This document shows positions 42,458 through 54,559 of a stretch of DNA of 64,000 nt, piece after piece (position 1 is the first letter of the stretch; every line of letters starts with the position of its first letter). The stretch is from the IMG/VR virus record IMGVR_UViG_3300042868_005134, positions 310,001 through 374,000 of that record, one strand, 5' to 3'. A program made the position numbers and the translations under genes. The notes under the pieces are model-generated. The model was given only the letters and a program-made list of their open reading frames with translations. It made no database searches and had not been told where the DNA came from.

Positions 42458-42484
42458 AAAAAAATAGCACCCGAAGGTGCTATT
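42458..42484 (-). terminator. Intrinsic terminator
   Basis: AATAGCACC-TTCG-GGTGCTATT plus T-run. Confidence 0.85.
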
Positions 42485-42501
42485 CAAAACTAAGTTTTTG
42501 C

Positions 42502-43602
42502 TTAAAAAGCATCGTAGTAGTGGAAGTTCTTTTCTTTCACTTTGGTAAGTGTAAGAGCATGACCATCCTTGTTCATGAAGATAAACATGCCACTTTGTGG
42601 ATCAATCTTTTGGATTTCAGCTGGCGTAAAACTAGCTTCTTCCCAGTTCCAATCTGCATCTTCCTTGTCGTCGTCTTTGTCAGTCCAGGGTAGGCCTGCG
42701 TTAGACACTTTGAACGACAAGTGGATCTTGCTTTGGAGTGGATTACCTTTCCATTCGCGAGACTCCAGATGCTTTTGTTCAACAGGAATACCTTTGAAGC
42801 TCAGTTGAGTTGAATACTTGTTGCCGTCATCAAATTCTGGTTTGGCATTCAACATCTTCAATGCTTCTTCAGGAGATTCATTGTAGCGATTCATTTCTTC
42901 AACTAATGCTTTCAGCATGTCAAAGTTGAACTGGTTAAACAACATGGCAATTGAGCAAATCTTAGCAATGTGTTCCTTGGCATTCAAGTTGTCCTCACAG
43001 TACTCGATGATAAAGTCCTGTGTCAAGCCTGTGTAGTCCAGCATGTAGTAGATACGACCTGGACGATTACGCATGTGGCTATCCACACGCCACTTGTCGT
43101 TACAGGTAATCACAAACATTTTCTTGCTGGGGAATACACCGTCCAACAAAGTCAGCATGGCTTCTTGCTCTTGTGCGTCGTAGACTTTTTCAAACTCGTC
43201 AAACAACACAACACATGGTTGCTCGATAGCCTGAATCAAGGCATTGAACTTATCACCGGTCCACGCATTGTTAATAACAATGGTAGGATGGCCTTGATTG
43301 GCTGCATGAATTGACAAGGCTTTTGCCAGCAAACTTTTGCCGCTACCTTTCTCACCAGTAAGCATTACGCCAGTGCTGGCACTACGATCCATGAATGTAT
43401 TAAAAATACGATTTGTATTTTTGTCTAAGTCGCCGTACCGCTTGCCTTTGATCTCAAACGAATCAATTTGTTCAAGATACAACTCACCACTCATTGGATT
43501 TTCTTTAATGGTAAAATTAGCCGCTGGTAGTGCCTCGTGTAGGTCCATGGCTTCTTTTGATGTTACACGAAACGAGATTCCTGATTTTAAAAAATATGAC
43601 AT
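42502..43602 (-). CDS. AAA+ ATPase
   Basis: Walker A GEKGSGKS, Walker B VLFDEFEK, NRPGRI. Confidence 0.9.
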   Translation of the reverse strand: MSYFLKSGISFRVTSKEAMDLHEALPAANFTIKENPMSGELYLEQIDSFEIKGKRYGDLDKNTNRIFNTFMDRSASTGVMLTGEKGSGKSLLAKALSIHAANQGHPTIVINNAWTGDKFNALIQAIEQPCVVLFDEFEKVYDAQEQEAMLTLLDGVFPSKKMFVITCNDKWRVDSHMRNRPGRIYYMLDYTGLTQDFIIEYCEDNLNAKEHIAKICSIAMLFNQFNFDMLKALVEEMNRYNESPEEALKMLNAKPEFDDGNKYSTQLSFKGIPVEQKHLESREWKGNPLQSKIHLSFKVSNAGLPWTDKDDDKEDADWNWEEASFTPAEIQKIDPQSGMFIFMNKDGHALTLTKVKEKNFHYYDAF

Positions 43603-43693: not shown

Positions 43694-43721
43694 AAAAAAA
43701 ATAGCACCCGAAGGTGCTATT
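43694..43721 (-). terminator. Intrinsic terminator, identical hairpin to 42463-42484
   Basis: AATAGCACC-TTCG-GGTGCTATT plus T-run. Confidence 0.85.
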
Positions 43722-43735
43722 TAAAAACAATGTTT

Positions 43736-45151
43736 TTACAGCTTGTAACGATCACTCATTACAGTCTTAAGCATGATGCCTTCTGGAGTGAACTGATCCA
43801 AGTCAGCGGCTAGCAAGCTAGTCATTATACTTGGGCTGAATCCACTTACCAATGCGGCACCACTCTTGTCAGCCTTAACAGGCACGTTGTCTGAACTGTT
43901 TAGGTTCCAGAAAACAACTTGTGGCATGCTGTAGCCTGCGGCTTCGAACTTGCGTTCGATCATTTCCATTGCGCTGTCGTCGTGCTTGGCGCATTGGTCA
44001 AACTGCATGTCACTCAAGATCAGCAACATGGCTGGCATGTCGCTGGCTGGTACTGAACCCTTAACCGCTACGTCTAGAATCTTGTTCATAGCCGCGTTTA
44101 GGTTAGTGCTCATGTCCCAATCACTCTTGCTCATTTGAGCAACCTTGTCAACAATGTTACCCTTTAGAGTAACAAGTTCTGGCTTGCTAGAGAAAGTCAA
44201 GAAAGTGTCCTTGAACACACCCTTGTTCTTGTCTGCTAGGTACAGGCCCAAGCTGATTGAAACATCCATACAAGTCACATTAGTGTTCTTTCCTGCTGGG
44301 CAAGACATAGAACCGCTAACGTCTACGATTGGCATGATGCTGGCATCTCCCACATAGTTTGGCAAAGCATCCCACTGTGCCACGATGTGGTCAGTGGCTG
44401 TCTTGTCCAAAATTGCACGGTTGTAGCTTCCGATAACACCCTTCAACACGTCATGTGGGAAGATTGCGCTGGCGTTAACCTTGACAGTCTTGTCACCACT
44501 TACCAACTTGGCCACATACTCAGCGAATGCTGGTGTGTGACGGCTGAATGCCTTCTTGTAGTTGCGTGAAGCAACACTTGGCACGTGACTGAAGTTGATG
44601 TTGTCCCAGTCGTTGGCACACATTTGTGTTTCCACAACTGTGGTCATTCCCACTAAACTCTTACGATACTGCTTTGGAGTCATTCCAAAGAATGCTCGTA
44701 CTTCAGCCGCAATCTTGCCCTTACGAGGAGTCCACTTTGCGGCCAGACCGTTACGGGCACGTAGGGCATCGCCCAACATGGTATAAGCGGCTGACTTCAA
44801 GTCAGGGTTAGTGAAGACAAAGATGTCATCCCAACGGCCAACTTCAGGGATCTTGCGTAGCAAAGCCAAAGCGGCGTCTGGGTCACGCTTTTCTAGATGT
44901 ACTAGAATGTCGCGGAACAATTGACGTTCACCTGCACCACCACGGACATCACGTGCCCATTGTGCGATGCGTAGTGCTACGTCACTGTTTTCTACATAAG
45001 CGGCAGTGAAGTCGCCTACAATGTTCTTACCACGGCTTGCGCCGATCTTGTAGAACAGGTCCACAGTGGCCTTGGCTGTGCTCTTACGTGCCTTCATGCC
45101 ATTGGCAGTACGGGCTTCTTGGTTTGCTATTGCTGTTACAAATGCGTTCAT
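43736..45151 (-). CDS. TROVE/Ro60-like RNA-binding protein with vWA domain (DUF2828-type)
   Basis: ARDVRGGAGER, GRWDD, AAKWTPR helical region; MIDAS DVSGSMS; STN; ILSDMQFD; VFWNL; LVSGFS. Confidence 0.8.
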   Translation of the reverse strand: MNAFVTAIANQEARTANGMKARKSTAKATVDLFYKIGASRGKNIVGDFTAAYVENSDVALRIAQWARDVRGGAGERQLFRDILVHLEKRDPDAALALLRKIPEVGRWDDIFVFTNPDLKSAAYTMLGDALRARNGLAAKWTPRKGKIAAEVRAFFGMTPKQYRKSLVGMTTVVETQMCANDWDNINFSHVPSVASRNYKKAFSRHTPAFAEYVAKLVSGDKTVKVNASAIFPHDVLKGVIGSYNRAILDKTATDHIVAQWDALPNYVGDASIMPIVDVSGSMSCPAGKNTNVTCMDVSISLGLYLADKNKGVFKDTFLTFSSKPELVTLKGNIVDKVAQMSKSDWDMSTNLNAAMNKILDVAVKGSVPASDMPAMLLILSDMQFDQCAKHDDSAMEMIERKFEAAGYSMPQVVFWNLNSSDNVPVKADKSGAALVSGFSPSIMTSLLAADLDQFTPEGIMLKTVMSDRYKL

Positions 45152-45162
45152 TTTATTACCTC

Positions 45163-45220
45163 ACAGAATGTGTTTTTTTTCGATATGCGTGAAAATTTAA
45201 AGTTGCTGTTAACATTCTAA
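45163..45220 (-). ncRNA. Family-1 element, copy 0 (in the 5' UTR of the TROVE-like gene)
   Basis: AGAATGT-TAACAGCAA...ACATTCT-GT, abutting the GAGGT RBS. Confidence 0.7.
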
Positions 45221-45226
45221 AACTTT

Positions 45227-45472
45227 AACAGGATGATCGTGCCAATTTGTTTAGTATTCTGGTCTGACCAATTACGGCACTCAGACCCTATCAACATTCA
45301 TGTTGACTATTCACACTCGGCTTTCTGTAGTGAACACATAGTATGTCTTTCCATACTGTCGTCTATTCCATCTGCGTACATGGTATTTCACATGTATAAA
45401 CTTTTCAGTCCACCCTTACGGGGCACATTCTATAGCATTAAGCGTTAGTTTAAATTGCTGTAGTCATCCAAA
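45227..45472 (-). ncRNA. Family-1 Y-like RNA, copy 1 (about 240 nt, multi-hairpin)
   Basis: GGATGA-CTACAGCAA...TCATCC-TGTT enclosing at least 5 hairpins. Confidence 0.7.
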
Positions 45473-45475
45473 TAT

Positions 45476-45650
45476 AACAGGATCGTTTTCTACTTTTTGT
45501 TTTTATCGAGGAGACTTATCGAAACTCCTCTATCTTCACTGTCCTTGCTTGCGCATTGTCTTTAACCTTCAAAGCCCCGAAAGGCTCCAGCTAATAACAG
45601 GGTAAGTGAAGCAATCCATAGTAATATGTAGTTGCTGTACCGATCCTAAA
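45476..45650 (-). ncRNA. Family-1 Y-like RNA, copy 2 (about 170 nt)
   Basis: AGGATCG-GTACAGCAA...CGATCCT-GTT; internal CTTCACT/AGTGAAG and GAGGAG/CTCCTC stems. Confidence 0.7.
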
Positions 45651-45684
45651 ACTGTCCACAAGCATTATTGCTTGCTATGTGACT

Positions 45685-45713
45685 ATTATAACAGTATTGC
45701 GCTGTCTTGTCAC
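45685..45713 (-). promoter_or_regulatory. sigma70-type promoter for family-1 copies 2, 1, 0 and the TROVE-like gene
   Basis: GTGACA-17 nt-TATAAT. Confidence 0.65.
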
Positions 45714-45744
45714 TACATTTTGGCTAAACTGCTAAAATATAAAT

Positions 45745-45821
45745 TGGTCGGAGTACAAGGATTCGAACCTTGGACCCCCTGGTCCCAAACCAGGTGCGCT
45801 ACCAGACTGCGCTACACTCCG
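45745..45821 (-). tRNA. tRNA-Pro(TGG)
   Basis: Cloverleaf; loop TT-TGG-GA; CCA. Confidence 0.95.
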
Positions 45822-45823
45822 AA

Positions 45824-45976
45824 TTAACTTGCTACAATATGCGGTATATATGGAACTGCTCTTGGACCACCATACAGTTGCTCGAAAAGTTTTTTAGCCT
45901 CTTGCGGTGTATCCGCATAGATACGTTTCTTTTCTTCACCTTGAGGTGTTCTTACAGTTGCTTCATACATTGGCAT
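45824..45976 (-). CDS. Hypothetical protein (50 aa)
   Basis: AAGGA RBS; MPMYEATVRTPQG... Confidence 0.55.
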   Translation of the reverse strand: MPMYEATVRTPQGEEKKRIYADTPQEAKKLFEQLYGGPRAVPYIPHIVAS

Positions 45977-45990
45977 ATTGTATCCTTAAA

Positions 45991-46066
45991 TGGTACCTGG
46001 TGTCAGACTCGAACTGACATCGTTCTCCGTGTAAAGGAGATGCATAACCTCTCTGCGCAACCAGGC
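45991..46066 (-). tRNA. tRNA-Val(TAC)
   Basis: TCTCC-TTTACAC-GGAGA; CCA. Confidence 0.9.
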
Positions 46067-46075
46067 ATTAAATTT

Positions 46076-46149
46076 TGGAGCGGGATGGGAGAATCGAACT
46101 CCCGACATTAGATTGGAAATCTAAGGTAATGCCATTTTACGAATCCCGC
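46076..46149 (-). tRNA. tRNA-Gly(TCC)
   Basis: TTAGA-TTTCCAA-TCTAA; CCA. Confidence 0.92.
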
Positions 46150-46488
46150 ACACTTTATAGGTGCTCTCTGTGGCGCTTGAATCCACGGCAGCCCTTCTCT
46201 TCATGGCCGGTCCTTGCTTTGGTCGACGTTGGCAAGTTTCTCGGTGTTCCATTGTAGCTACTCAGAAAGCACGTATAAAGTGTCCGGCTACTCACACCAC
46301 ATGAGCCCCGGACTGAGCAGTTACTCTGTCCATAACATTTTCTTCTTCTGGAAAGGCTGTTAATCCTCACCCTAGGCAGTTTCCAGTATCCCTTAAATGG
46401 GGACTGTGAGGTCAGGTCCTAGTGTACCCTCTGGTCTATCGTTACAGAGACGCTATTTCGTTACGTAGAAATAGTAAGACGGGTTTTT

Positions 46489-46610
46489 AACAGGATAGGC
46501 TTTGCCTTATTTTTTATTTAAAACTTGACAAAGCGAACAAGTTCGTCCGGGTCGCCCCAGACCTTTGATACGGTTATTCACCGTTAGTGGTTTGCTGTCT
46601 CTATCCTAAA
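46489..46610 (-). ncRNA. Family-1 Y-like RNA, copy 3
   Basis: AGGATAG-AGACAGCAAA...CTATCCT-GTT with internal hairpins. Confidence 0.7.
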
Positions 46611-46612
46611 AC

Positions 46613-46687
46613 TGGTGCCCAATGTCTGATTCGAACAGACGACCTACCGCTTACAAGGCGGTTGCTCTACCCCTGAGCCAATCGGGC
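46613..46687 (-). tRNA. tRNA-Thr(TGT)
   Basis: ACCGC-CTTGTAA-GCGGT; CCA. Confidence 0.95.
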
Positions 46688-46693
46688 TATATG

Positions 46694-46876
46694 TTACTTA
46701 TTTGTTGCTGTCTGTATATTATAATTGATTTGACTTTGTTTGTCAAGTCTTTCAAATTCTTCATCTTCAAGTTTGGCTTCTTCTAGACGCCTAGGATCAG
46801 GCTTTCGAAAAATAGTATCATAATTCGAACCAAATGCTTTCAAATCTGTTGGACGTTGTTTACTGCCCTTACTCAT
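46694..46876 (-). CDS. Hypothetical protein
   Basis: AGGAG RBS; MSKGSKQRP...NYDTIF. Confidence 0.55.
   Translation of the reverse strand: MSKGSKQRPTDLKAFGSNYDTIFRKPDPRRLEEAKLEDEEFERLDKQSQINYNIQTATNK
46718..46746 (-). promoter_or_regulatory. Consensus sigma70 promoter
   Basis: TTGACA-17 nt-TATAAT. Confidence 0.8.
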
Positions 46877-48287: not shown

Positions 48288-48518
48288 TTATCTGACTCTT
48301 CGCAGATAATCTGAATTGATTTTTCCACTCTGTATTTCTAACAGAGCTGTAACCGGAGCATTCAATTGCTCAGGACTTTCACTTAATCTGTGTTGCCTTG
48401 CCAATTCTCTTGCTCGAATTGCGGCAACAATAACAAGGTCGAATCTGTTGCCTATGTTGCTAACACAGATATCGGTATTGATATCTGTTCCCCGACTTGC
48501 TATATTATTACGTTTCAT
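48288..48518 (-). CDS. rpoZ: RNA polymerase omega subunit homologue
   Basis: IGNRFDLVIVAAIRAREL...PVTALLEIQSGKI. Confidence 0.85.
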   Translation of the reverse strand: MKRNNIASRGTDINTDICVSNIGNRFDLVIVAAIRARELARQHRLSESPEQLNAPVTALLEIQSGKINSDYLRRVR

Positions 48519-48538
48519 AAGTTTCCTATTAAAAAAAT

Positions 48539-49219: not shown

Positions 49220-49248
49220 ATTATAGCGTCTTCTGAGGTTGCTGTCAA
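49220..49248 (-). promoter_or_regulatory. Consensus sigma70 promoter heading tRNA array A
   Basis: TTGACA-17 nt-TATAAT. Confidence 0.85.
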
Positions 49249-51569: not shown

Positions 51570-51645
51570 TGGCAGGGGAGATGAGATTCGAACTCATGAT
51601 GACGATTTCAAAGACCGTTGCCTTAGGCCACTAGGCGACACCCCA
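51570..51645 (-). tRNA. tRNA-Gln(TTG)
   Basis: ACGGT-CTTTGAA-ATCGT; CCA. Confidence 0.88.
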
Positions 51646-51653
51646 ACAAATAA

Positions 51654-51776
51654 AACAGGATACGTTTTTTACGAAGGGCATGGAGCCCTTTGCTCAACCG
51701 CTGAGCGAATCTGCCATAAGGCAAATGTTGGAATCGAACCAACGTGTCATAAATGACTTTGCTGTGCGTATCCTTA
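51654..51776 (-). ncRNA. Family-1 copy 4: YrlA-like circularly permuted tRNA mimic
   Basis: AGGATACG/CGTATCCT helix + ACAGCAAA enclosing T-arm, loop-closed acceptor stem, D-arm and anticodon-like arm, in that order. Confidence 0.8.
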
Positions 51777-51779
51777 ACT

Positions 51780-51899
51780 TGGTGTCGTTGCTGGGATTCG
51801 AACCCAGATCTCTTCCTTTAGAGTGGAATTTTGATTGTGCTGACTGTATCCTTAACAGGATAACCTTTTATAAGCGTCCTACCATTAGACGACAACGAC
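51780..51899 (-). ncRNA. Family-1 copy 5: 120 nt tRNA-like RNA with internal family-1 helix and CTA loop
   Basis: GTCGTTG/CAACGAC-ACCA; D- and T-arms; insertion TATCCT-GTTA-AGGATA-CAGTCAGCA; TTCC-ACTCTAAA-GGAA. Confidence 0.7.
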
Positions 51900-51904
51900 A
51901 TGAC

Positions 51905-51981
51905 TGGTACCCCTAGGCAGATTCGAACCGCCATCCAGCAGATTTTAAGTCTACCCGCACTACCAATTAGCGTACAGGGGC
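51905..51981 (-). tRNA. tRNA-Leu(TAA), short variable loop
   Basis: GTAGA-CTTAAAA-TCTGC; CCA. Confidence 0.88.
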
Positions 51982-52158
51982 ATAAATATTTTTGTGAAAA
52001 CTTACGATCACTTAACACCGCAAGGATTACAGTTTCACCTTTGTTTGTACCAAGGTGTGTGCTGTGTTATGGTACACGATATATACGACAACACCTACTT
52101 CGAATTACAATACTTCACTGACGTTAACAAAGCACTTCGCTTTGTCAACAATTTATAA

Positions 52159-52235
52159 TGGTACCCCTTGTCTGATTCGAACAGACAGCCAACTCCTTTT
52201 GAGAGAATCCGCACTACCAATTAGCGTAAAGGGGC
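52159..52235 (-). tRNA. tRNA-Leu(CAA), short variable loop
   Basis: Loop CT-CAA-AA; CCA. Confidence 0.88.
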
Positions 52236-52238
52236 ATA

Positions 52239-52315
52239 TGGTACCTTCGGGCGGGTTCGAACCCCCAACCAACAGTTTCTAAAACTATCCGCACTCCCAA
52301 TTAGCGTACGAAGGC
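52239..52315 (-). tRNA. tRNA-Leu(TAG), short variable loop
   Basis: Loop TT-TAG-AA; CCA. Confidence 0.85.
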
Positions 52316-52326
52316 ATTTAAATTTT

Positions 52327-52401
52327 TGGTAGTCGATGCTGGGTTCGAACCAGCGACCTACACGATGTCAACGTGGTGCTCTACCACTGAGCTAATCGAC
52401 T
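52327..52401 (-). tRNA. tRNA-Val(GAC)
   Basis: Loop TT-GAC-AT; CCA. Confidence 0.92.
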
Positions 52402-52402
52402 A

Positions 52403-52477
52403 TGGTACCCTTGGACAGTTTCGAAATGTCGACCCTCGCCTTATCAAGACGATGCTCTTCCTCTGAGCTACAAGGGC
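52403..52477 (-). tRNA. tRNA-Ile(GAT)
   Basis: TCGTC-TTGATAA-GGCGA; CCA. Confidence 0.9.
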
Positions 52478-52491
52478 ATAAACTACTTAGG

Positions 52492-52562
52492 GGTGACTAT
52501 CGGGGCTCGAACCCGAACTACCAGAGTCACAGTCTAGGTTGCTACCATTACAACATAGCCAC
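52492..52562 (-). tRNA. tRNA-His(GTG), no encoded CCA or G-1
   Basis: CTAGA-CTGTGAC-TCTGG; C73. Confidence 0.85.
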
Positions 52563-52574
52563 ACCTAAATAGTC

Positions 52575-52648
52575 TGGTCCTCTCGACAAGAATCGAACTT
52601 GTAATGGCCGGTTATCAGCCGACTGTTATACCATTTAACTACAAGAGG
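52575..52648 (-). tRNA. tRNA-Ile(GAT)
   Basis: GTCGG-CTGATAA-CCGGC; CCA. Confidence 0.88.
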
Positions 52649-52654
52649 AATAAA

Positions 52655-52720
52655 AACAGGATAGCATTTTTTGGCTTTTTTTACAGAAAAGATTTTTTTG
52701 ATTTGCTGTTGCTATCCTAA
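52655..52720 (-). ncRNA. Family-1 copy 6: mini RNA with GTA (Tyr) anticodon stem-loop
   Basis: AGGATAGCA/TGCTATCCT; ACAGCAAA; CTTTT-CTGTAAA-AAAAG. Confidence 0.75.
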
Positions 52721-52722
52721 AC

Positions 52723-52812
52723 TGGCAGTGAGTAAGGGATTCGAACCCTTGGGCCCCTAGCGGAGCCGACAGTTTAGCAAACTATTGGGTTAAGCCACTC
52801 CCCCAACTCACT
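52723..52812 (-). tRNA. tRNA-Ser(GCT)
   Basis: ATAGT-TTGCTAA-ACTGT; variable arm; CCA. Confidence 0.9.
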
Positions 52813-52974
52813 ATATAGGTTTTCCCGGCGACCAACTATCTTTCTTAAGGACTCGCTGGCTTGTCTCGTGTGAAAGAGTTTATACAGACCTTGTACAATT
52901 CTACTGGCGTGTCATGCTCAAGAAATAGGGCACTAGAATACAAGGGACTCATCTCAACGTCTAGCTGGGAAACT

Positions 52975-53066
52975 TGGCGGAAGACGGAGGAGTCGAACCC
53001 CATCCCATTTCTGAGAACCCAGTTTTCAAGGCTGGTCGGCGCACCAACGCACCTGCATCATCTTCC
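52975..53066 (-). tRNA. tRNA-Ser(TGA), 8/4-type cloverleaf
   Basis: 8 bp acceptor GGAAGATG/CGTCTTCC; 4 bp T-stem; 6 bp D-stem; loop CT-TGA-AA; CCA. Confidence 0.8.
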
Positions 53067-53072
53067 ATAACT

Positions 53073-53147
53073 TGGTGCTCCCTCACGGACTCGAACCGCA
53101 ATAACCGGACTACAAAACCGGTATAATAGCCTTTATATTAAAGGAGC
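53073..53147 (-). tRNA. tRNA-Thr(TGT)
   Basis: Loop TT-TGT-AG; CCA. Confidence 0.85.
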
Positions 53148-53152
53148 AAATT

Positions 53153-53227
53153 TGGCGCCCACATATGGAATCGAACCACAATCCCCGGTTTCGTAAACCA
53201 GTATATTATCCATTATACTATGCGGGC
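53153..53227 (-). tRNA. tRNA-Arg(ACG)
   Basis: CTGGT-TTACGAA-ACCGG; CCA. Confidence 0.9.
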
Positions 53228-53232
53228 AAATT

Positions 53233-53307
53233 TGGTGGTAATAGTAGGATTTGAACCTACACCTTGCTCCGTATGAAGGAGGTGCACTACCGTTATGCTA
53301 TATTACC
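53233..53307 (-). tRNA. tRNA with CAT anticodon (Met or Ile2)
   Basis: Loop TT-CAT-AC; CCA. Confidence 0.85.
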
Positions 53308-53308
53308 A

Positions 53309-53402
53309 TATAGAAACACACTAGAGTTTTACGATAAACTACGCTCCTGAGTTTCTGCCCAAGAGCTCATAGGTCTGCCTATGTTTCTAATGTGTTTTTA
53401 TA
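53309..53402 (-). ncRNA. Family-2 long-stem element with three inner hairpins
   Basis: TATAAAAACACATTAGA/TCTAGTGTGTTTCTATA; CATAGG/CCTATG; GCTCTTGGG/CTCAGGAGC; AGTTT/AAACT. Confidence 0.55.
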
Positions 53403-53477
53403 TGGTAGGGGCACAGGGAATCGAACCCTGATAGACCGGTTAAAAGCCGGATATTCTAGCCGTTGAATTATACCCCC
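53403..53477 (-). tRNA. tRNA-Lys(TTT)
   Basis: Loop CT-TTT-AA; CCA. Confidence 0.9.
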
Positions 53478-53480
53478 ATA

Positions 53481-53556
53481 TGGTCCACAGCGTCAGATTC
53501 GAACTGACACCTCATCGGTTAAGAGCCGAGTACGCTACCGTTAACGCCAGCTGTGG
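53481..53556 (-). tRNA. tRNA-Lys(CTT)
   Basis: Loop CT-CTT-AA; CCA. Confidence 0.88.
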
Positions 53557-53641
53557 ATGGATCGTAAATATTTTCTTTTACGTGCCATCCAGGACCATAC
53601 GGGATCCGGGATGACACTACAGTTTACCTGTACGTTTCATG

Positions 53642-53770
53642 TCATTCTCCTTTGTTGATATTTCTCTTTTGTGCTTGGCGTTCTGATTTCCAGAACACTC
53701 GTTTCCAATCTTTCAAATGCTTCCACCATTGTGGAGGCGCAGTTAGGTTACCTTTTTTGACATTTGCCAT
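53642..53770 (-). CDS. Small basic Trp-rich protein (42 aa)
   Basis: AAGGA RBS; MANVKKGNLTAPPQWWKHLKDWKRVFWKSER... Confidence 0.55.
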   Translation of the reverse strand: MANVKKGNLTAPPQWWKHLKDWKRVFWKSERQAQKRNINKGE

Positions 53771-53786
53771 AGGATTTCCTTTATAA

Positions 53787-53846
53787 AACAGGATGCTTAT
53801 TTTTCAATTAAAAGTTGAATTTTTGAATTTGCTGTTCGCATCCTAA
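53787..53846 (-). ncRNA. Family-1 copy 7: mini RNA with TTT (Lys) anticodon stem-loop
   Basis: AGGATGC/GCATCCT; ACAGCAAA; TTCAA-CTTTTAA-TTGAA. Confidence 0.75.
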
Positions 53847-53848
53847 AA

Positions 53849-53924
53849 TGGTACACCCTGTTGGAATCGAACCAACTTCAACGGCTCTTCAGACCGCCGC
53901 TATGACCACATCAGCTAAAGGTGC
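53849..53924 (-). tRNA. tRNA-Phe(GAA)
   Basis: GCGGT-CTGAAGA-GCCGT; CCA. Confidence 0.88.
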
Positions 53925-53932
53925 ATTATACT

Positions 53933-54008
53933 TGGTCTCCCTACCAGGATTCGAACCTGGACCACACGGCCCCAAACCGTGTACGCAACCTGATAACGCT
54001 TTAGAGAG
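53933..54008 (-). tRNA. tRNA-Pro(TGG)
   Basis: CACGG-TTTGGGG-CCGTG; CCA. Confidence 0.88.
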
Positions 54009-54015
54009 ATAAAAT

Positions 54016-54090
54016 TGGTGGAGGCCGAGGGAATCGAACCCTTCTAGTCACGATGCTTGCAAGGCAACGCCGTAGCCCACTACTGCCCCC
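54016..54090 (-). tRNA. tRNA-Ala(TGC), reduced D-arm
   Basis: G3:U70; GTAG-TGGG-CTAC; loop CT-TGC-AA; CCA. Confidence 0.8.
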
Positions 54091-54160
54091 AATTACAAAG
54101 CATACTATTCTAACTCGTCAAAAGAGTCTGCGTTATACGTCTTTAGTATACTTTGTAATT
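54091..54160 (-). ncRNA. Family-2 long-stem element
   Basis: AATTACAAAGTATACTA/TAGTATGCTTTGTAATT; inner GACTC-TTTTGAC-GAGTT. Confidence 0.5.
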
Positions 54161-54237
54161 GGCTGTCCGACTAGGGATCGAACCTAGCTCATTCTTCGTT
54201 AACAGCGAAGCGCCTACACCATGCTTGCTCTCGGACA
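54160..54237 (-). tRNA. tRNA-Asn(GTT)
   Basis: CTTCG-CTGTTAA-CGAAG; CCA. Confidence 0.85.
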
Positions 54238-54244
54238 ATAAAAT

Positions 54245-54320
54245 TGGCGCCATGGACGGGACTCGAACCCGCCTGGTACGGATAGACAATCCGCTGCCCT
54301 ACCCCGAGGACTACCATGGC
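54245..54320 (-). tRNA. tRNA-Asp(GTC)
   Basis: GCGGA-TTGTCTA-TCCGT; CCA. Confidence 0.88.
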
Positions 54321-54324
54321 ATGT

Positions 54325-54399
54325 TGGTATCGCGTACGGGGATCGAACCCGCCTGAGTAAGTTGAAAGCCTACGGACCTCACCAGAAGTCAAACGCGAT
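54325..54399 (-). tRNA. tRNA-Glu(TTC)
   Basis: GTAGG-CTTTCAA-CTTAC; CCA. Confidence 0.85.
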
Positions 54400-54406
54400 G
54401 TAATAA

Positions 54407-54468
54407 AACAGGATAGCATCTTTTTTCCATTAAAAGTGAAATTAGAATTTTTGCTGTTGCTATCCTAA
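54407..54468 (-). ncRNA. Family-1 copy 8: mini RNA with TTT (Lys) anticodon stem-loop
   Basis: AGGATAGCA/TGCTATCCT; ACAGCAAA; TTTCA-CTTTTAA-TGGAA. Confidence 0.75.
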
Positions 54469-54471
54469 AAT

Positions 54472-54559
54472 TGGTGGAGGCTGATGGAATCGAACCACTT
54501 GACAGCCACCCTGCTTAATATGTCTACCGGGTTACAGCCGGCAACAGGGAACAACCTCC
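54472..54559 (-). tRNA. Atypical D-armless tRNA-Tyr(GTA)-like gene
   Basis: GGAGGTT/AGCCTCC-ACCA; GCCGG-CTGTAAC-CCGGT; normal T-arm; no D hairpin. Confidence 0.65.

What the first reader, a model, noticed from the sequence alone, without database searches (positions are those of the whole stretch)
45152..45220. Handle copy abutting the Ro60-like gene's RBS: predicted translational autoregulation
Seen: AGAATGT-TAACAGCAA...ACATTCT-GT-GAGGT-AATAAA-ATG. The helix has compensatory changes relative to the other copies yet keeps ACAGCAA, and ends 2 nt before the Shine-Dalgarno. Inference: excess protein binds its own leader and represses translation, matching protein level to RNA ligand supply. This independently links the motif to this protein.
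Basis: partly seen in the sequence, partly recalled or inferred. Interest (0 to 1): 0.7.

Follow-up and report, generated by a model that had tools for sequence, protein, structure and literature searches.

The report
Ro60-like gene leader carries its RNA handle
A giant freshwater phage places a weak copy of the RNA "handle" shared by its small Y-RNA-like RNAs directly against the ribosome-binding site of its Ro60-like gene. This arrangement is conserved with compensatory changes and recurs in distant phages, so the protein most likely limits its own translation, though nobody has tested binding or repression.

Summary
On the minus strand, 45164-45219 forms an 8-pair helix (U·G plus AGAATGT/ACATTCT) enclosing TA-ACAGCAA and a small inner hairpin. 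The helix ends 1-2 nt before the Shine-Dalgarno GAGG of a 471-aa DUF2828/DUF7788 gene (43736-45151).

- **Protein:** its AlphaFold model matches only Ro60 structures over its full length.
- **Family:** the hairpin is one of nine same-strand "handle" copies, all in the tRNA region. A covariance model built without any leader copy finds it at 38 bits (E 5e-6).
- **Close relatives:** in 41 distinct leaders from relatives (85-100% protein identity) the helix is 100% paired, 4 of 7 pairs show compensatory changes, and ACAGCAA is invariant. The hairpin stays against the SD even where a new ORF and promoter were inserted upstream.
- **Distant phages:** leader handles recur in LAh_8, phiN3, DLP_6 and KVP40. 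In KVP40 the 3' arm contains the AUG. Many other orthologues lack one.
- **Stability:** leader copies are much weaker (-3.5 to -6.3 kcal/mol) than the free copies (-11 to -14).

Best reading: an autogenous translational operator that mimics the protein's RNA ligand (confidence about 0.5). Binding and repression are inferred, not shown. Main rival: it is simply the last small RNA of a tandem array, or a 5' stabiliser.

The parts
45212..45219 (-). 5' arm of the leader helix: U·G wobble plus AGAATGT
   Evidence: Covariation.
45203..45209 (-). Invariant ACAGCAA on the 5' strand, preceded by TA (45210-45211)
   Evidence: the column is invariant in 41 leaders.
45177..45195 (-). Inner A/U-rich hairpin (UUUUC...GAAAA), followed by the A-rich 3' strand 45172-45176
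   Evidence: fold. By eye the arms change together among relatives (TTAC/GTAA, TTTCA/TGAAA, CTTTT/AAAAG); this was not formally counted.
45164..45171 (-). 3' arm of the leader helix: ACATTCT plus G
45158..45162 (-). Shine-Dalgarno GAGGT, starting 1-2 nt after the helix
   Evidence: in all relatives an AGG or GAGG lies within 4 nt of the helix.
43736..45151 (-). Ro60-like gene, 471 aa, DUF2828 + DUF7788, phrog_850; MIDAS D277-x-S279-x-S281
43699..43722 (-). Intrinsic-terminator-like hairpin closing the transcription unit
45685..45713 (-). Sigma-70-like promoter (GTGACA-17-TATAAT with TG), the nearest one upstream of the two long handle RNAs, the leader and the gene
   Evidence: consensus match only.
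45479..45647 (-). Long handle RNA: AGGATCG-GT-ACAGCAA...CGATCCT-GTTATATT
45228..45470 (-). Long handle RNA directly upstream of the leader hairpin: GGATGA-CT-ACAGCAA...TCATCC-TGTTAAAG
   Evidence: The 3' part is very deep in metatranscriptome contigs.
46492..46607 (-). Long handle RNA: AGGATAG-AG-ACAGCAA...CTATCCT
   Evidence: 24.6 bits.
51658..51773 (-). Handle RNA with a tRNA-like T arm inside
52659..52717 (-). Short free handle RNA between tRNAs
   Evidence: -13.8 kcal/mol.
53790..53844 (-). Short free handle RNA; a small ORF's AAGGA follows 8 nt later
54411..54465 (-). Short free handle RNA between tRNA-like genes
   Evidence: -14.4 kcal/mol.

Best explanation
The hairpin is the 5' leader of the mRNA for a phage Ro60-like RNA-binding protein. 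It is a deliberately weak copy of the 'handle' that defines the phage's family of Y-RNA-like small RNAs. The handle has a closing helix with a UAG/CUG base, a single-stranded ACAGCAA on the 5' strand, a small inner hairpin, and an A-rich 3' strand.

Proposed mechanism:
- The small RNAs are the protein's preferred ligands.
- When protein exceeds free small RNA, it also binds the leader copy.
- The helix ends 1-2 nt from the Shine-Dalgarno, so a bound 53-kDa ring blocks the 30S subunit and translation falls.

Shown: the structure, its family membership, its conserved position against the ribosome-binding site, its recurrence in distant orthologues, its lower stability, the Ro60 fold of the protein, and the co-occurrence of handles with this gene.

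Inferred: that this protein binds the handle, and that binding represses translation.
For: 1. **Structure under selection.** 41 distinct orthologous leaders are 100% paired. 4 of 7 pairs change on both sides, giving three alternative stems (AGGTTAT/ATAACCT, AGAATGC/GCATTCT, AGTTTAG/CTAAACT). ACAGCAA and the UAG/CUG base are invariant while the interior drifts.
2. **Position under selection.** The SD begins within 4 nt of the helix in every relative. In L025, L028 and L029 an ORF plus a TTGACA-17-TACAAT promoter was inserted upstream, yet a handle with a new stem still sits between promoter and SD. The hairpin therefore travels with the gene as its 5' UTR.
3. **Family membership.** A model trained only on non-leader copies gives 38.2 bits, E 4.9e-6. 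There are only four hits in the 383-kb genome, all on this strand in this region.
4. **Recurrence at the ribosome-binding site in distant orthologues (36-48% identity).**
   - LAh_8: GAATGT-TT-ACAGCAA-28-ACATTC-TGAAAGGAG.
   - phiN3: hairpin directly after its own promoter, 5 nt before AAGGA.
   - DLP_6: 3' arm runs into GGAG.
   - KVP40 and Vibrio 1.081: the SD lies in the loop and the AUG in the 3' arm.
   - L137 and L163: 3' arm abuts GAGGAG or GAAAGGAGG.

5. **Leader copies are weak.** They fold at -4.4, -3.5, -6.1, -6.2 and -6.3 kcal/mol. The free short copies fold at -10.9 to -14.4. This is what a lower-affinity operator would look like.
6. **The protein has a Ro60 fold.** The top 13 PDB matches are all Ro60, TM 0.47-0.62, and the MIDAS DxSxS is invariant.
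7. **Handles go with the gene.** 48 lie on the gene strand, 4 on the opposite strand and 3.7 in shuffles, over 23 loci. 5 of 5 phages with the gene have handles, against 0 of 5 tRNA-rich phages without it.
8. **Transcript abundance.** Metatranscriptome contigs give the leader the low depth of the gene body, not the very high depth of the adjacent small RNA. One contig spans small-RNA end, leader and gene start (weak evidence).
Against:
- The leader handle is patchy. It is absent from S13, Ci1, Ahp1, RSP15, Sf17 and fHe-Yen9-04. Only 3 of 51 distinct IMG/VR relatives of KVP40 have a strict one, plus two variants.
- Short copies of the same architecture occur between tRNAs far from the gene (54411-54465, 53790-53844, 52659-52717), so the leader copy could be just another small RNA.
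- In BUCT-ZZ01, RHph_I1_18, BUCT194 and Campylobacter F361 the last copy ends 11-30 nt from the SD or start with a U-rich tail, like an ordinary small RNA.
- In the window the SD and AUG are not themselves paired, and the helix is marginal (z 0.03), so any repression rests wholly on protein bulk.
- The cross-phage handle set was collected by a search that required the stem, so its 100% pairing is partly by construction.
Confidence: 0.5

Rival explanations
1. The hairpin is simply the last member of a tandem array of short handle RNAs. It is transcribed with the gene and cut away, or left on as a 5' stem-loop that protects the mRNA from 5'-end-dependent decay. There is no feedback on translation.
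For: - It has the same short architecture as three free copies between tRNAs.
- Tandem handle arrays directly upstream of the gene are common: Listeria LP-125, LAh_8, BUCT-ZZ01, RHph_I1_18, BUCT194.
- In several of those the last copy keeps a U-rich tail and sits 11-30 nt from the SD or start.
- Many orthologues manage without a leader copy.
Against: - The window-clade leader has lost the U-rich tail that follows every free copy and has an SD in its place.
- It is far less stable than the free copies, which is odd for a stable small RNA or a protective stem.
- It is retained with a new stem after promoter insertion.
- In KVP40 and Vibrio 1.081 the 3' arm contains the start codon, so the element cannot be removed from the mRNA.
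- Metatranscriptome depth over it matches the gene, not the abundant neighbouring small RNA (weak).
Confidence: 0.25
2. The handle is recognised by some other factor, such as a host or phage ribonuclease or a tRNA-processing enzyme. It marks cleavage points in long tRNA/small-RNA/mRNA precursors, and the leader copy merely defines the 5' end of the mRNA.
For: - All copies lie in the tRNA cluster on the transcribed strand, usually right after a tRNA 3' end.
- Promoters are few and far apart there, so processing must occur.
- The link to the Ro60-like protein is by co-location only.
Against: - The same ACAGCAA handle accompanies the gene in phages of Proteobacteria, Firmicutes, Actinobacteria, Cyanobacteria and Campylobacter, whose RNases differ.
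- It is missing from five tRNA-rich phages that lack the gene.
- It also occurs in leaders that have their own promoter and no upstream tRNA: phiN3, KVP40, L025.
Confidence: 0.13
3. The protein binds the leader handle but activates or localises rather than represses. For example it could stabilise the mRNA, or load newly made protein onto RNA in cis.
For: The same structural and comparative evidence as the main explanation. Nothing computed here gives the sign of the effect.
Against: - A bulky ligand 1-2 nt from the SD usually hinders 30S binding, as in the established thrS, T4 gene 43 and ribosomal-protein operators.
- In KVP40 the AUG is inside the helix the protein would stabilise.
- Positive autoregulation of an abundant RNA-binding protein would be unstable.
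Confidence: 0.08
4. Chance resemblance without function.
For: - The helix is not more stable than shuffles.
- ACAGCAA alone is only about twofold enriched in the window.
Against: - Covariation and invariance across 41 leaders.
- Covariance-model E 4.9e-6.
- Recurrence in distant phages.
Confidence: 0.02

Closest known systems
Ro60 / Y RNA ribonucleoproteins (metazoan Y RNAs; bacterial Yrn1, YrlA, YrlB; Thermus phage phiLo Ro60 with Yrl1/Yrl2)
   Same: - The protein is a ring-shaped HEAT-repeat plus vWA fold with a MIDAS motif.
- The partner RNAs are encoded next to the gene on the same strand.
- The RNAs are closed by a helix formed from their 5' and 3' ends, with a conserved motif on the 5' strand.
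- Some RNAs carry a tRNA-like module (PMC4201824, PMC12135203).
   Different: - The protein belongs to Pfam DUF2828/DUF7788, not TROVE, and shows no sequence-level PDB match.
- The conserved motif is ACAGCAA, not GNCGAAN0-1G or GGUCCGA (PMC4201824).
- No window RNA reaches any Rfam Y-RNA model. A mycobacteriophage Lumos copy reaches only 39 of the 69 bits needed for YrlA, through its tRNA-like part.
- I found no report of a copy of the binding site in the protein's own leader for any Ro60.
Autogenous translational operators that mimic the protein's main RNA ligand (E. coli thrS leader and tRNA-Thr; ribosomal proteins S8, L1, L20, S15 and rRNA; T4 gp43 and RegA; MS2 coat protein and the replicase start)
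   Same: - A paralogous, weaker copy of the protein's RNA ligand motif sits at or over the ribosome-binding site of its own mRNA.
- The geometry varies between lineages, from abutting the SD to enclosing the AUG.
- The comparison to these systems rests on established knowledge of them, not on tests here.
   Different: - Different protein and RNA families.
- Here neither binding nor repression has been measured.
- The ligand is a family of phage small RNAs, not tRNA or rRNA.
Suspected Y RNAs of model phages with a Ro60-like gene (Bas63 gp130, PMC11482910; Listeria phage CKA15_055, PMC12282133)
   Same: - This appears to be the same protein family, sitting next to tRNA genes, although neither protein was compared here.
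- Those papers proposed, without defining a motif, that nearby unannotated or 'tRNA' transcripts are Y RNAs.
- Relatives Sf17 and LP-125 carry clear ACAGCAA handles in exactly those places.
   Different: - Those papers give no RNA motif, structure or leader element.
- They report a counter-defence phenotype (ppl) and presence in virions, which this analysis cannot address.

Membership tests
ACAGCAA-handle RNA family (defined here from 25 non-leader short copies of 12 phages) | Full-length match to covariance model R1, which was trained without any leader copy | tested here: met
   Window 45162-45221(-) scores 38.2 bits, E 4.9e-6, model positions 1-65. It is one of four hits in the 383-kb genome. 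Three window paralogues were in the training set.
ACAGCAA-handle RNA family (defined here from 25 non-leader short copies of 12 phages) | Closing helix supported by compensatory changes, with invariant ACAGCAA 1-3 nt after the 5' arm | tested here: met
   100% paired, 4 of 7 pairs changed on both sides, ACAGCAA invariant.
ACAGCAA-handle RNA family (defined here from 25 non-leader short copies of 12 phages) | U-rich or A/U-rich 3' tail after CUG(U), as in the free copies | tested here: not met
   The leader has GAGGTAATAAAATG instead. This is the feature that sets it apart.
Y RNA (Rfam Y_RNA, YrlA) | Match to the Rfam covariance model at its gathering score | tested here: not met
   No Y-RNA hit in the window at gathering score or at E up to 10.
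Y RNA (Rfam Y_RNA, YrlA) | Ro60-binding motif GNCGAAN0-1G or GGUCCGA near the 5' end (PMC4201824) | tested here: not met
   The sequence shows ACAGCAA instead.
Y RNA (Rfam Y_RNA, YrlA) | Encoded next to, and on the same strand as, a Ro60-type gene | tested here: met
Y RNA (Rfam Y_RNA, YrlA) | Bound by the Ro60-type protein | not testable with these tools
Ro60 / TROVE protein | Pfam TROVE domain | tested here: not met
   Only DUF2828 and DUF7788 match. No PDB sequence match.
Ro60 / TROVE protein | HEAT-repeat ring plus vWA fold | tested here: met
   The AF2 model has pLDDT 92. The top 13 Foldseek PDB hits are all Ro60 over the full length, TM 0.47-0.62 for most.
Ro60 / TROVE protein | MIDAS motif DxSxS in the vWA domain | tested here: met
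   D277, S279 and S281 are invariant in 74 homologues.
Autogenous translational operator by ligand mimicry | The operator resembles the protein's main RNA ligand | tested here: met
   That these RNAs are the protein's ligand is itself inferred.
Autogenous translational operator by ligand mimicry | The operator overlaps or abuts the ribosome-binding site | tested here: met
   The gap is 1-2 nt in the window and at most 4 nt in all close relatives. The AUG lies inside the helix in KVP40.
Autogenous translational operator by ligand mimicry | Conserved in orthologous leaders | tested here: inconclusive
   Present in all close relatives and several distant lineages, absent from many others.
Autogenous translational operator by ligand mimicry | The protein binds the operator and lowers translation | not testable with these tools
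   Needs bench assays.

The most novel reading that the evidence does not exclude
The ACAGCAA handle may be a portable address tag for a very widespread phage Ro60-like protein. This protein family (phrog_850) is found in more than 700 sequenced phages, including Felix O1-like, KVP40-like, Listeria P100-like, Staphylococcus and mycobacteriophages.

Phages appear to graft the tag onto four kinds of RNA:
- minimal ~60-nt RNAs;
- RNAs with a tRNA-like insert;
- the anticodon position of tRNA-like genes, in circularly permuted form;
- the protein's own mRNA.

Together these would form a previously undescribed ribonucleoprotein system with built-in feedback. Its free-protein level would report how many tagged RNAs are intact during infection.
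Probability: 0.3. Interest if true: 0.8.

Novelty: new variant of a known kind. Interest (0 to 1): 0.68.

Why it matters
Ro60-like proteins are encoded by hundreds of well-studied phages. Their RNA partners have only been guessed at (PMC11482910, PMC12282133). One family member counters a bacterial defence system, and another is packed into virions.

This finding gives three things:
- A concrete, conserved RNA motif that goes with the gene.
- A minimal ~55-nt candidate binding site for gel shifts and structural work.
- A testable regulatory circuit.

If the leader copy is an operator, it would be the first case I could find of a Ro60-type protein controlling its own synthesis through a Y-RNA mimic. 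It would also give a simple genetic read-out, a leader-reporter fusion, for who binds what in this system.

Tried and rejected
- **Rfam.** At gathering score, and at E up to 10 over 45100-46700 and 51600-54500, only tRNAs and noise turned up, such as Dictyostelium class I RNA at about half its threshold.
- **PDB by sequence.** No match.
- **Complex prediction** with protein plus leader RNA was counted but not folded, so it is no evidence either way.
- **Megablast of the locus against phage records** matched only tRNA genes; there is no close cultured relative.
- **Literature.** Searches for DUF2828 found only unrelated plant and animal papers. ACAGCAA with Ro60 found only unrelated papers, mostly human or medical.
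- **Terminator reading rejected.** The stem is weak, has 2 G-C pairs and is not followed by a T run.
- **Promoter reading rejected.** TTAACA within the hairpin has no usable -10 on this strand, and stem covariation with variable interior length points to RNA.
- **Free-energy test.** The leader helix is not better than shuffles, so I rely on covariation rather than energy.
- **Metatranscriptome runs** are held only as contigs from mixed strains. They show presence and rough depth, not transcript ends.
- **S13 and Ci1 leaders.** They have a hairpin with an AG/CUG base before UAUAGAGGA but no ACAGCAA, and it overlaps the predicted -10. I left these unclassified.

Full report
**Setting**

The window is bases 310001-374000 of a 383-kb IMG/VR phage record. 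The region 45.1-54.5 kb is a minus-strand cluster of 38 tRNA genes, interspersed with small ORFs and non-coding stretches. At its downstream end lies a 471-aa ORF, 43736-45151 on the minus strand.

This ORF matches Pfam DUF7788 (E 3e-49), DUF2828 (E 8e-26) and PHROG 850 'RNA-binding protein'. An AAA ATPase gene follows it. Both genes end with the same terminator-like hairpin.

**The observation**

Folded alone, the 60-nt piece adopts the proposed structure. That structure is an 8-pair outer helix including a U·G wobble, an unpaired UA-ACAGCAA on the 5' side, a 5-pair A/U inner hairpin, and an A-rich 3' strand.

The fold is only -4.4 kcal/mol and no better than shuffles. With more flank, the minimum-energy fold differs. 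Energy therefore does not establish the helix; comparison between sequences does.

**The handle family in this genome**

Nine elements share the pattern (T)TTT-AGGATnn(n)-n-ACAGCAA ... nn(n)ATCCTG-T(T/A-rich). All are on the minus strand and all lie between 45165 and 54465.
- Three are short, about 55-60 nt: 54411-54465, 53790-53844 and 52659-52717.
- Five are longer. One of these (51658-51773) holds a tRNA-like T arm.
- The leader copy has the short architecture but differs in three ways. Its third pair is A-U rather than G-C. It has 2 G-C pairs rather than 3-4. An SD replaces the U-rich tail.

**Conservation in close relatives**

A protein-guided scan of IMG/VR returned 80 loci at 85-100% identity. 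Every locus with enough upstream sequence has the hairpin, giving 41 distinct versions.
- On the alignment the 7 Watson-Crick pairs are 100% paired.
- Four pairs change on both sides, giving stems AGGTTAT/ATAACCT, AGAATGC/GCATTCT and AGTTTAG/CTAAACT.
- No shuffle of 500 reaches the covariation score. Sliding the partner drops pairing to 29-65%.
- RNAalifold independently predicts the same helix plus the invariant U·G.
- ACAGCAA is invariant while the interior drifts.
- The SD (GAGG, AAAGG or AAGGA) always begins within 4 nt of the helix.

In L025, L028 and L029 an ORF and a TTGACA-17-TACAAT promoter have been inserted between the upstream small RNA and the gene. A handle with a different stem and a shorter interior still sits between that promoter and the SD. 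The hairpin thus belongs to the gene's 5' UTR. It is not merely the tail of a small-RNA array.

**Formal family membership**

I aligned 25 non-leader short copies, three from the window and 22 from eleven cultured phages, and built covariance model R1.
- In the window, R1 finds its three training copies, then the leader copy (38.2 bits, E 4.9e-6), then one long copy.
- In the whole genome it finds only four sites.
- All 46 hits in 31 other loci are on the gene's strand. They include leader variants L064 (45 bits), L057 (34.5), LAh_8 (30.7), L025 (22.7) and phiN3 (17.9).

Caveat: the training copies were collected with a script that required a 6-pair stem. The 100% pairing in that alignment is therefore partly by construction.

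**The protein**

An AlphaFold2 model built from 74 diverse homologues has pLDDT 92 and pTM 0.90.
- Its 13 best PDB matches are all Ro60, from Thermus phage phiLo, Xenopus, human and Deinococcus Rsr.
- These matches cover the full length, with probability 1.00 and TM mostly 0.47-0.62.
- The next matches are isolated vWA domains.
- The MIDAS DxSxS (D277, S279, S281) is invariant.
- Some GenBank records already call orthologues 'Ro-like' or 'Ro sixty-related'.

**The handle goes with the gene across phages**

I examined 22 cultured phages whose protein is 33-48% identical. Their hosts are Proteobacteria, Cyanobacteria, Campylobacter, Firmicutes and Mycobacterium.
- Within ±3 kb of the gene, these loci plus the window hold 48 strict handles on the gene strand. 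There are 4 on the other strand and 3.7 ± 2.0 in shuffles.
- ACAGCAA itself occurs 61 times against 7.
- R1 finds nothing below E 0.3 in five tRNA-rich phages without the gene: T4, T5, Atu_ph07, IME260 and S-H25.
- R1 finds hits in all five tested phages with the gene, including KVP40 and S13, which gave no training data.
- The Lumos middle copy reaches YrlA sub-threshold through its tRNA-like part, so some of these RNAs overlap the known YrlA class. The ACAGCAA handle lies outside that match.

**Leader handles in distant orthologues**

Present:
- LAh_8: GAATGT-TT-ACAGCAA-28-ACATTC-TGAAAGGAG, about 8 nt before ATG.
- phiN3: AAACGA-CA-ACAGCAA-12-TCGTTT-TGAAAAGGA, right after its own promoter.
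- DLP_6: AGATTGA-CC-ACAGCAC-...-TCAATCT-GGAG.
- KVP40, a 96% relative and Vibrio 1.081: GACATT-nn-ACAGCAA-19/20-AATGTC. The SD is in the loop and the ATG is in the 3' arm. Stem and motif are kept while the loop differs.
- IMG/VR contigs L137 and L163: the 3' arm runs into GAGGAG or GAAAGGAGG.

Intermediate: in BUCT-ZZ01, RHph_I1_18, BUCT194 and Campylobacter F361 the last handle RNA ends 11-30 nt from the SD or start and keeps a U-rich tail.

Absent: S13, Ci1, Ahp1, RSP15, Sf17, fHe-Yen9-04, and most of 51 distinct IMG/VR relatives of KVP40.

With strict criteria, 7 of 23 loci have a handle ending between -30 and +4 of the start. About 0.03 would be expected from the shuffle rate. About 0.4 would be expected if the observed handles were scattered at random along the loci. 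That second figure is too low a baseline, because handles can only occupy intergenic DNA.

All leader handles tested are weak, at -3.5 to -6.3 kcal/mol. The window's free short copies fold at -10.9 to -14.4.

**Transcription**

The nearest good promoter upstream is at 45713-45685. No promoter-like site lies between the upstream small RNA and the hairpin. A terminator follows the gene. The two long handle RNAs, the leader and the gene therefore probably form one transcription unit.

Freshwater metatranscriptome contigs cover the locus. The bin holding the 3' part of the adjacent small RNA is up to about 180 times deeper than the leader and 5' gene bins. One contig bridges 44952-45253. These are assembler depths from mixed strains and are only suggestive.

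**Interpretation**

A Ro60-like protein's RNA-ligand motif is duplicated, in weakened form, at the ribosome-binding site of its own mRNA. This is the layout of classical autogenous translational operators such as thrS, the ribosomal-protein operators, T4 gp43 and RegA, and MS2 coat protein.

The steps 'this protein binds the handle' and 'binding represses' are inferred. Because the leader copy is patchy, this would be a lineage-specific refinement and not a defining property of the system.

The rivals are:
- it is the last small RNA of an array, or a 5' stabiliser;
- it is a processing mark read by another factor;
- it is a positive effector site.

None is excluded. The first is the most serious.

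**Literature**

- Y RNAs next to TROVE-type Ro60 genes are known in bacteria and 22 phages. Their binding motif is GNCGAAN0-1G (PMC4201824).
- Thermus phage phiLo Ro60 binds two upstream Y-like RNAs (PMC12135203).
- Bas63 gp130 was noted to be Ro60-like, to sit next to tRNAs and to counter the ppl defence (PMC11482910).
- Listeria phage CKA15 has three very abundant unannotated transcripts upstream of its Rsr-like, virion-associated protein (PMC12282133). Its relative LP-125 has three ACAGCAA handles in that position.

I found no description of the ACAGCAA handle or of a leader copy.

Noticed in passing
window 51781-51900 (minus); also L089 4085-4200 and 4215-4320; L091 4396-4516 and 4526-4638: These tRNA-like genes have normal acceptor, D and T arms. 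In the anticodon position they carry a circularly permuted handle: 3' arm, CUG-containing tetraloop, 5' arm, then (A/U)CAGCA. The window example is UAUCCU-GUUA-AGGAUA-CAGUCAGCAC. It folds as a cloverleaf with the handle hairpin (z -2.7). ARAGORN does not call it, and S13's annotators call theirs tRNA-Ser and tRNA-OTHER.
   Followed up: partly
window 53744-53790 (minus): The short handle copy 53790-53844 is followed 8 nt later by AAGGA and the ATG of a small ORF of about 45 codons. This is a second gene whose ribosome-binding site lies close to a handle. I did not check whether the ORF is conserved.
   Followed up: no
window 42502-43602 (minus): An AAA+ ATPase gene (phrog_2376) lies directly downstream of the Ro60-like vWA gene and ends with the same terminator hairpin sequence (43699-43722 and 42462-42485). 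AAA+ ATPases of the MoxR type often partner vWA proteins, and LAh_8 also has an ATPase nearby.
   Followed up: no
window 48290-48520 (minus): A small ORF inside the tRNA cluster has a stretch (…VIVAAIRARELARQH…) that by eye resembles the RNA polymerase omega subunit. I did not test this.
   Followed up: no
window 55274, 49248, 47546, 46746 and 42318 (minus): Five perfect TTGACA-17-TATAAT sites, all on the transcribed strand of the tRNA region. This suggests the cluster is read by the host sigma-70 polymerase in a few long units. The ACAGCAA at 49239-49245 is just the -35 of one of them, not a handle.
   Followed up: partly
L105 2624-2883 (Listeria phage LP-125); L104 4716-5540 (Shigella phage Sf17): Clear ACAGCAA handle RNAs lie exactly where two published studies suspected unidentified Y RNAs: upstream of the Rsr-like gene of P100-like Listeria phages, and among the 'tRNA' stretch next to the gp130-type gene of Felix O1-like phages.
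   Followed up: partly
L091 2440-2500 and L094 2940-3000 (Cronobacter S13, Citrobacter Ci1): These leaders lack ACAGCAA. They do keep a hairpin with an AG...CUG base followed by UAUAGAGGA, which looks like a handle 3' half against the SD. The hairpin overlaps the predicted -10, so it is unclear whether it is transcribed.
   Followed up: no
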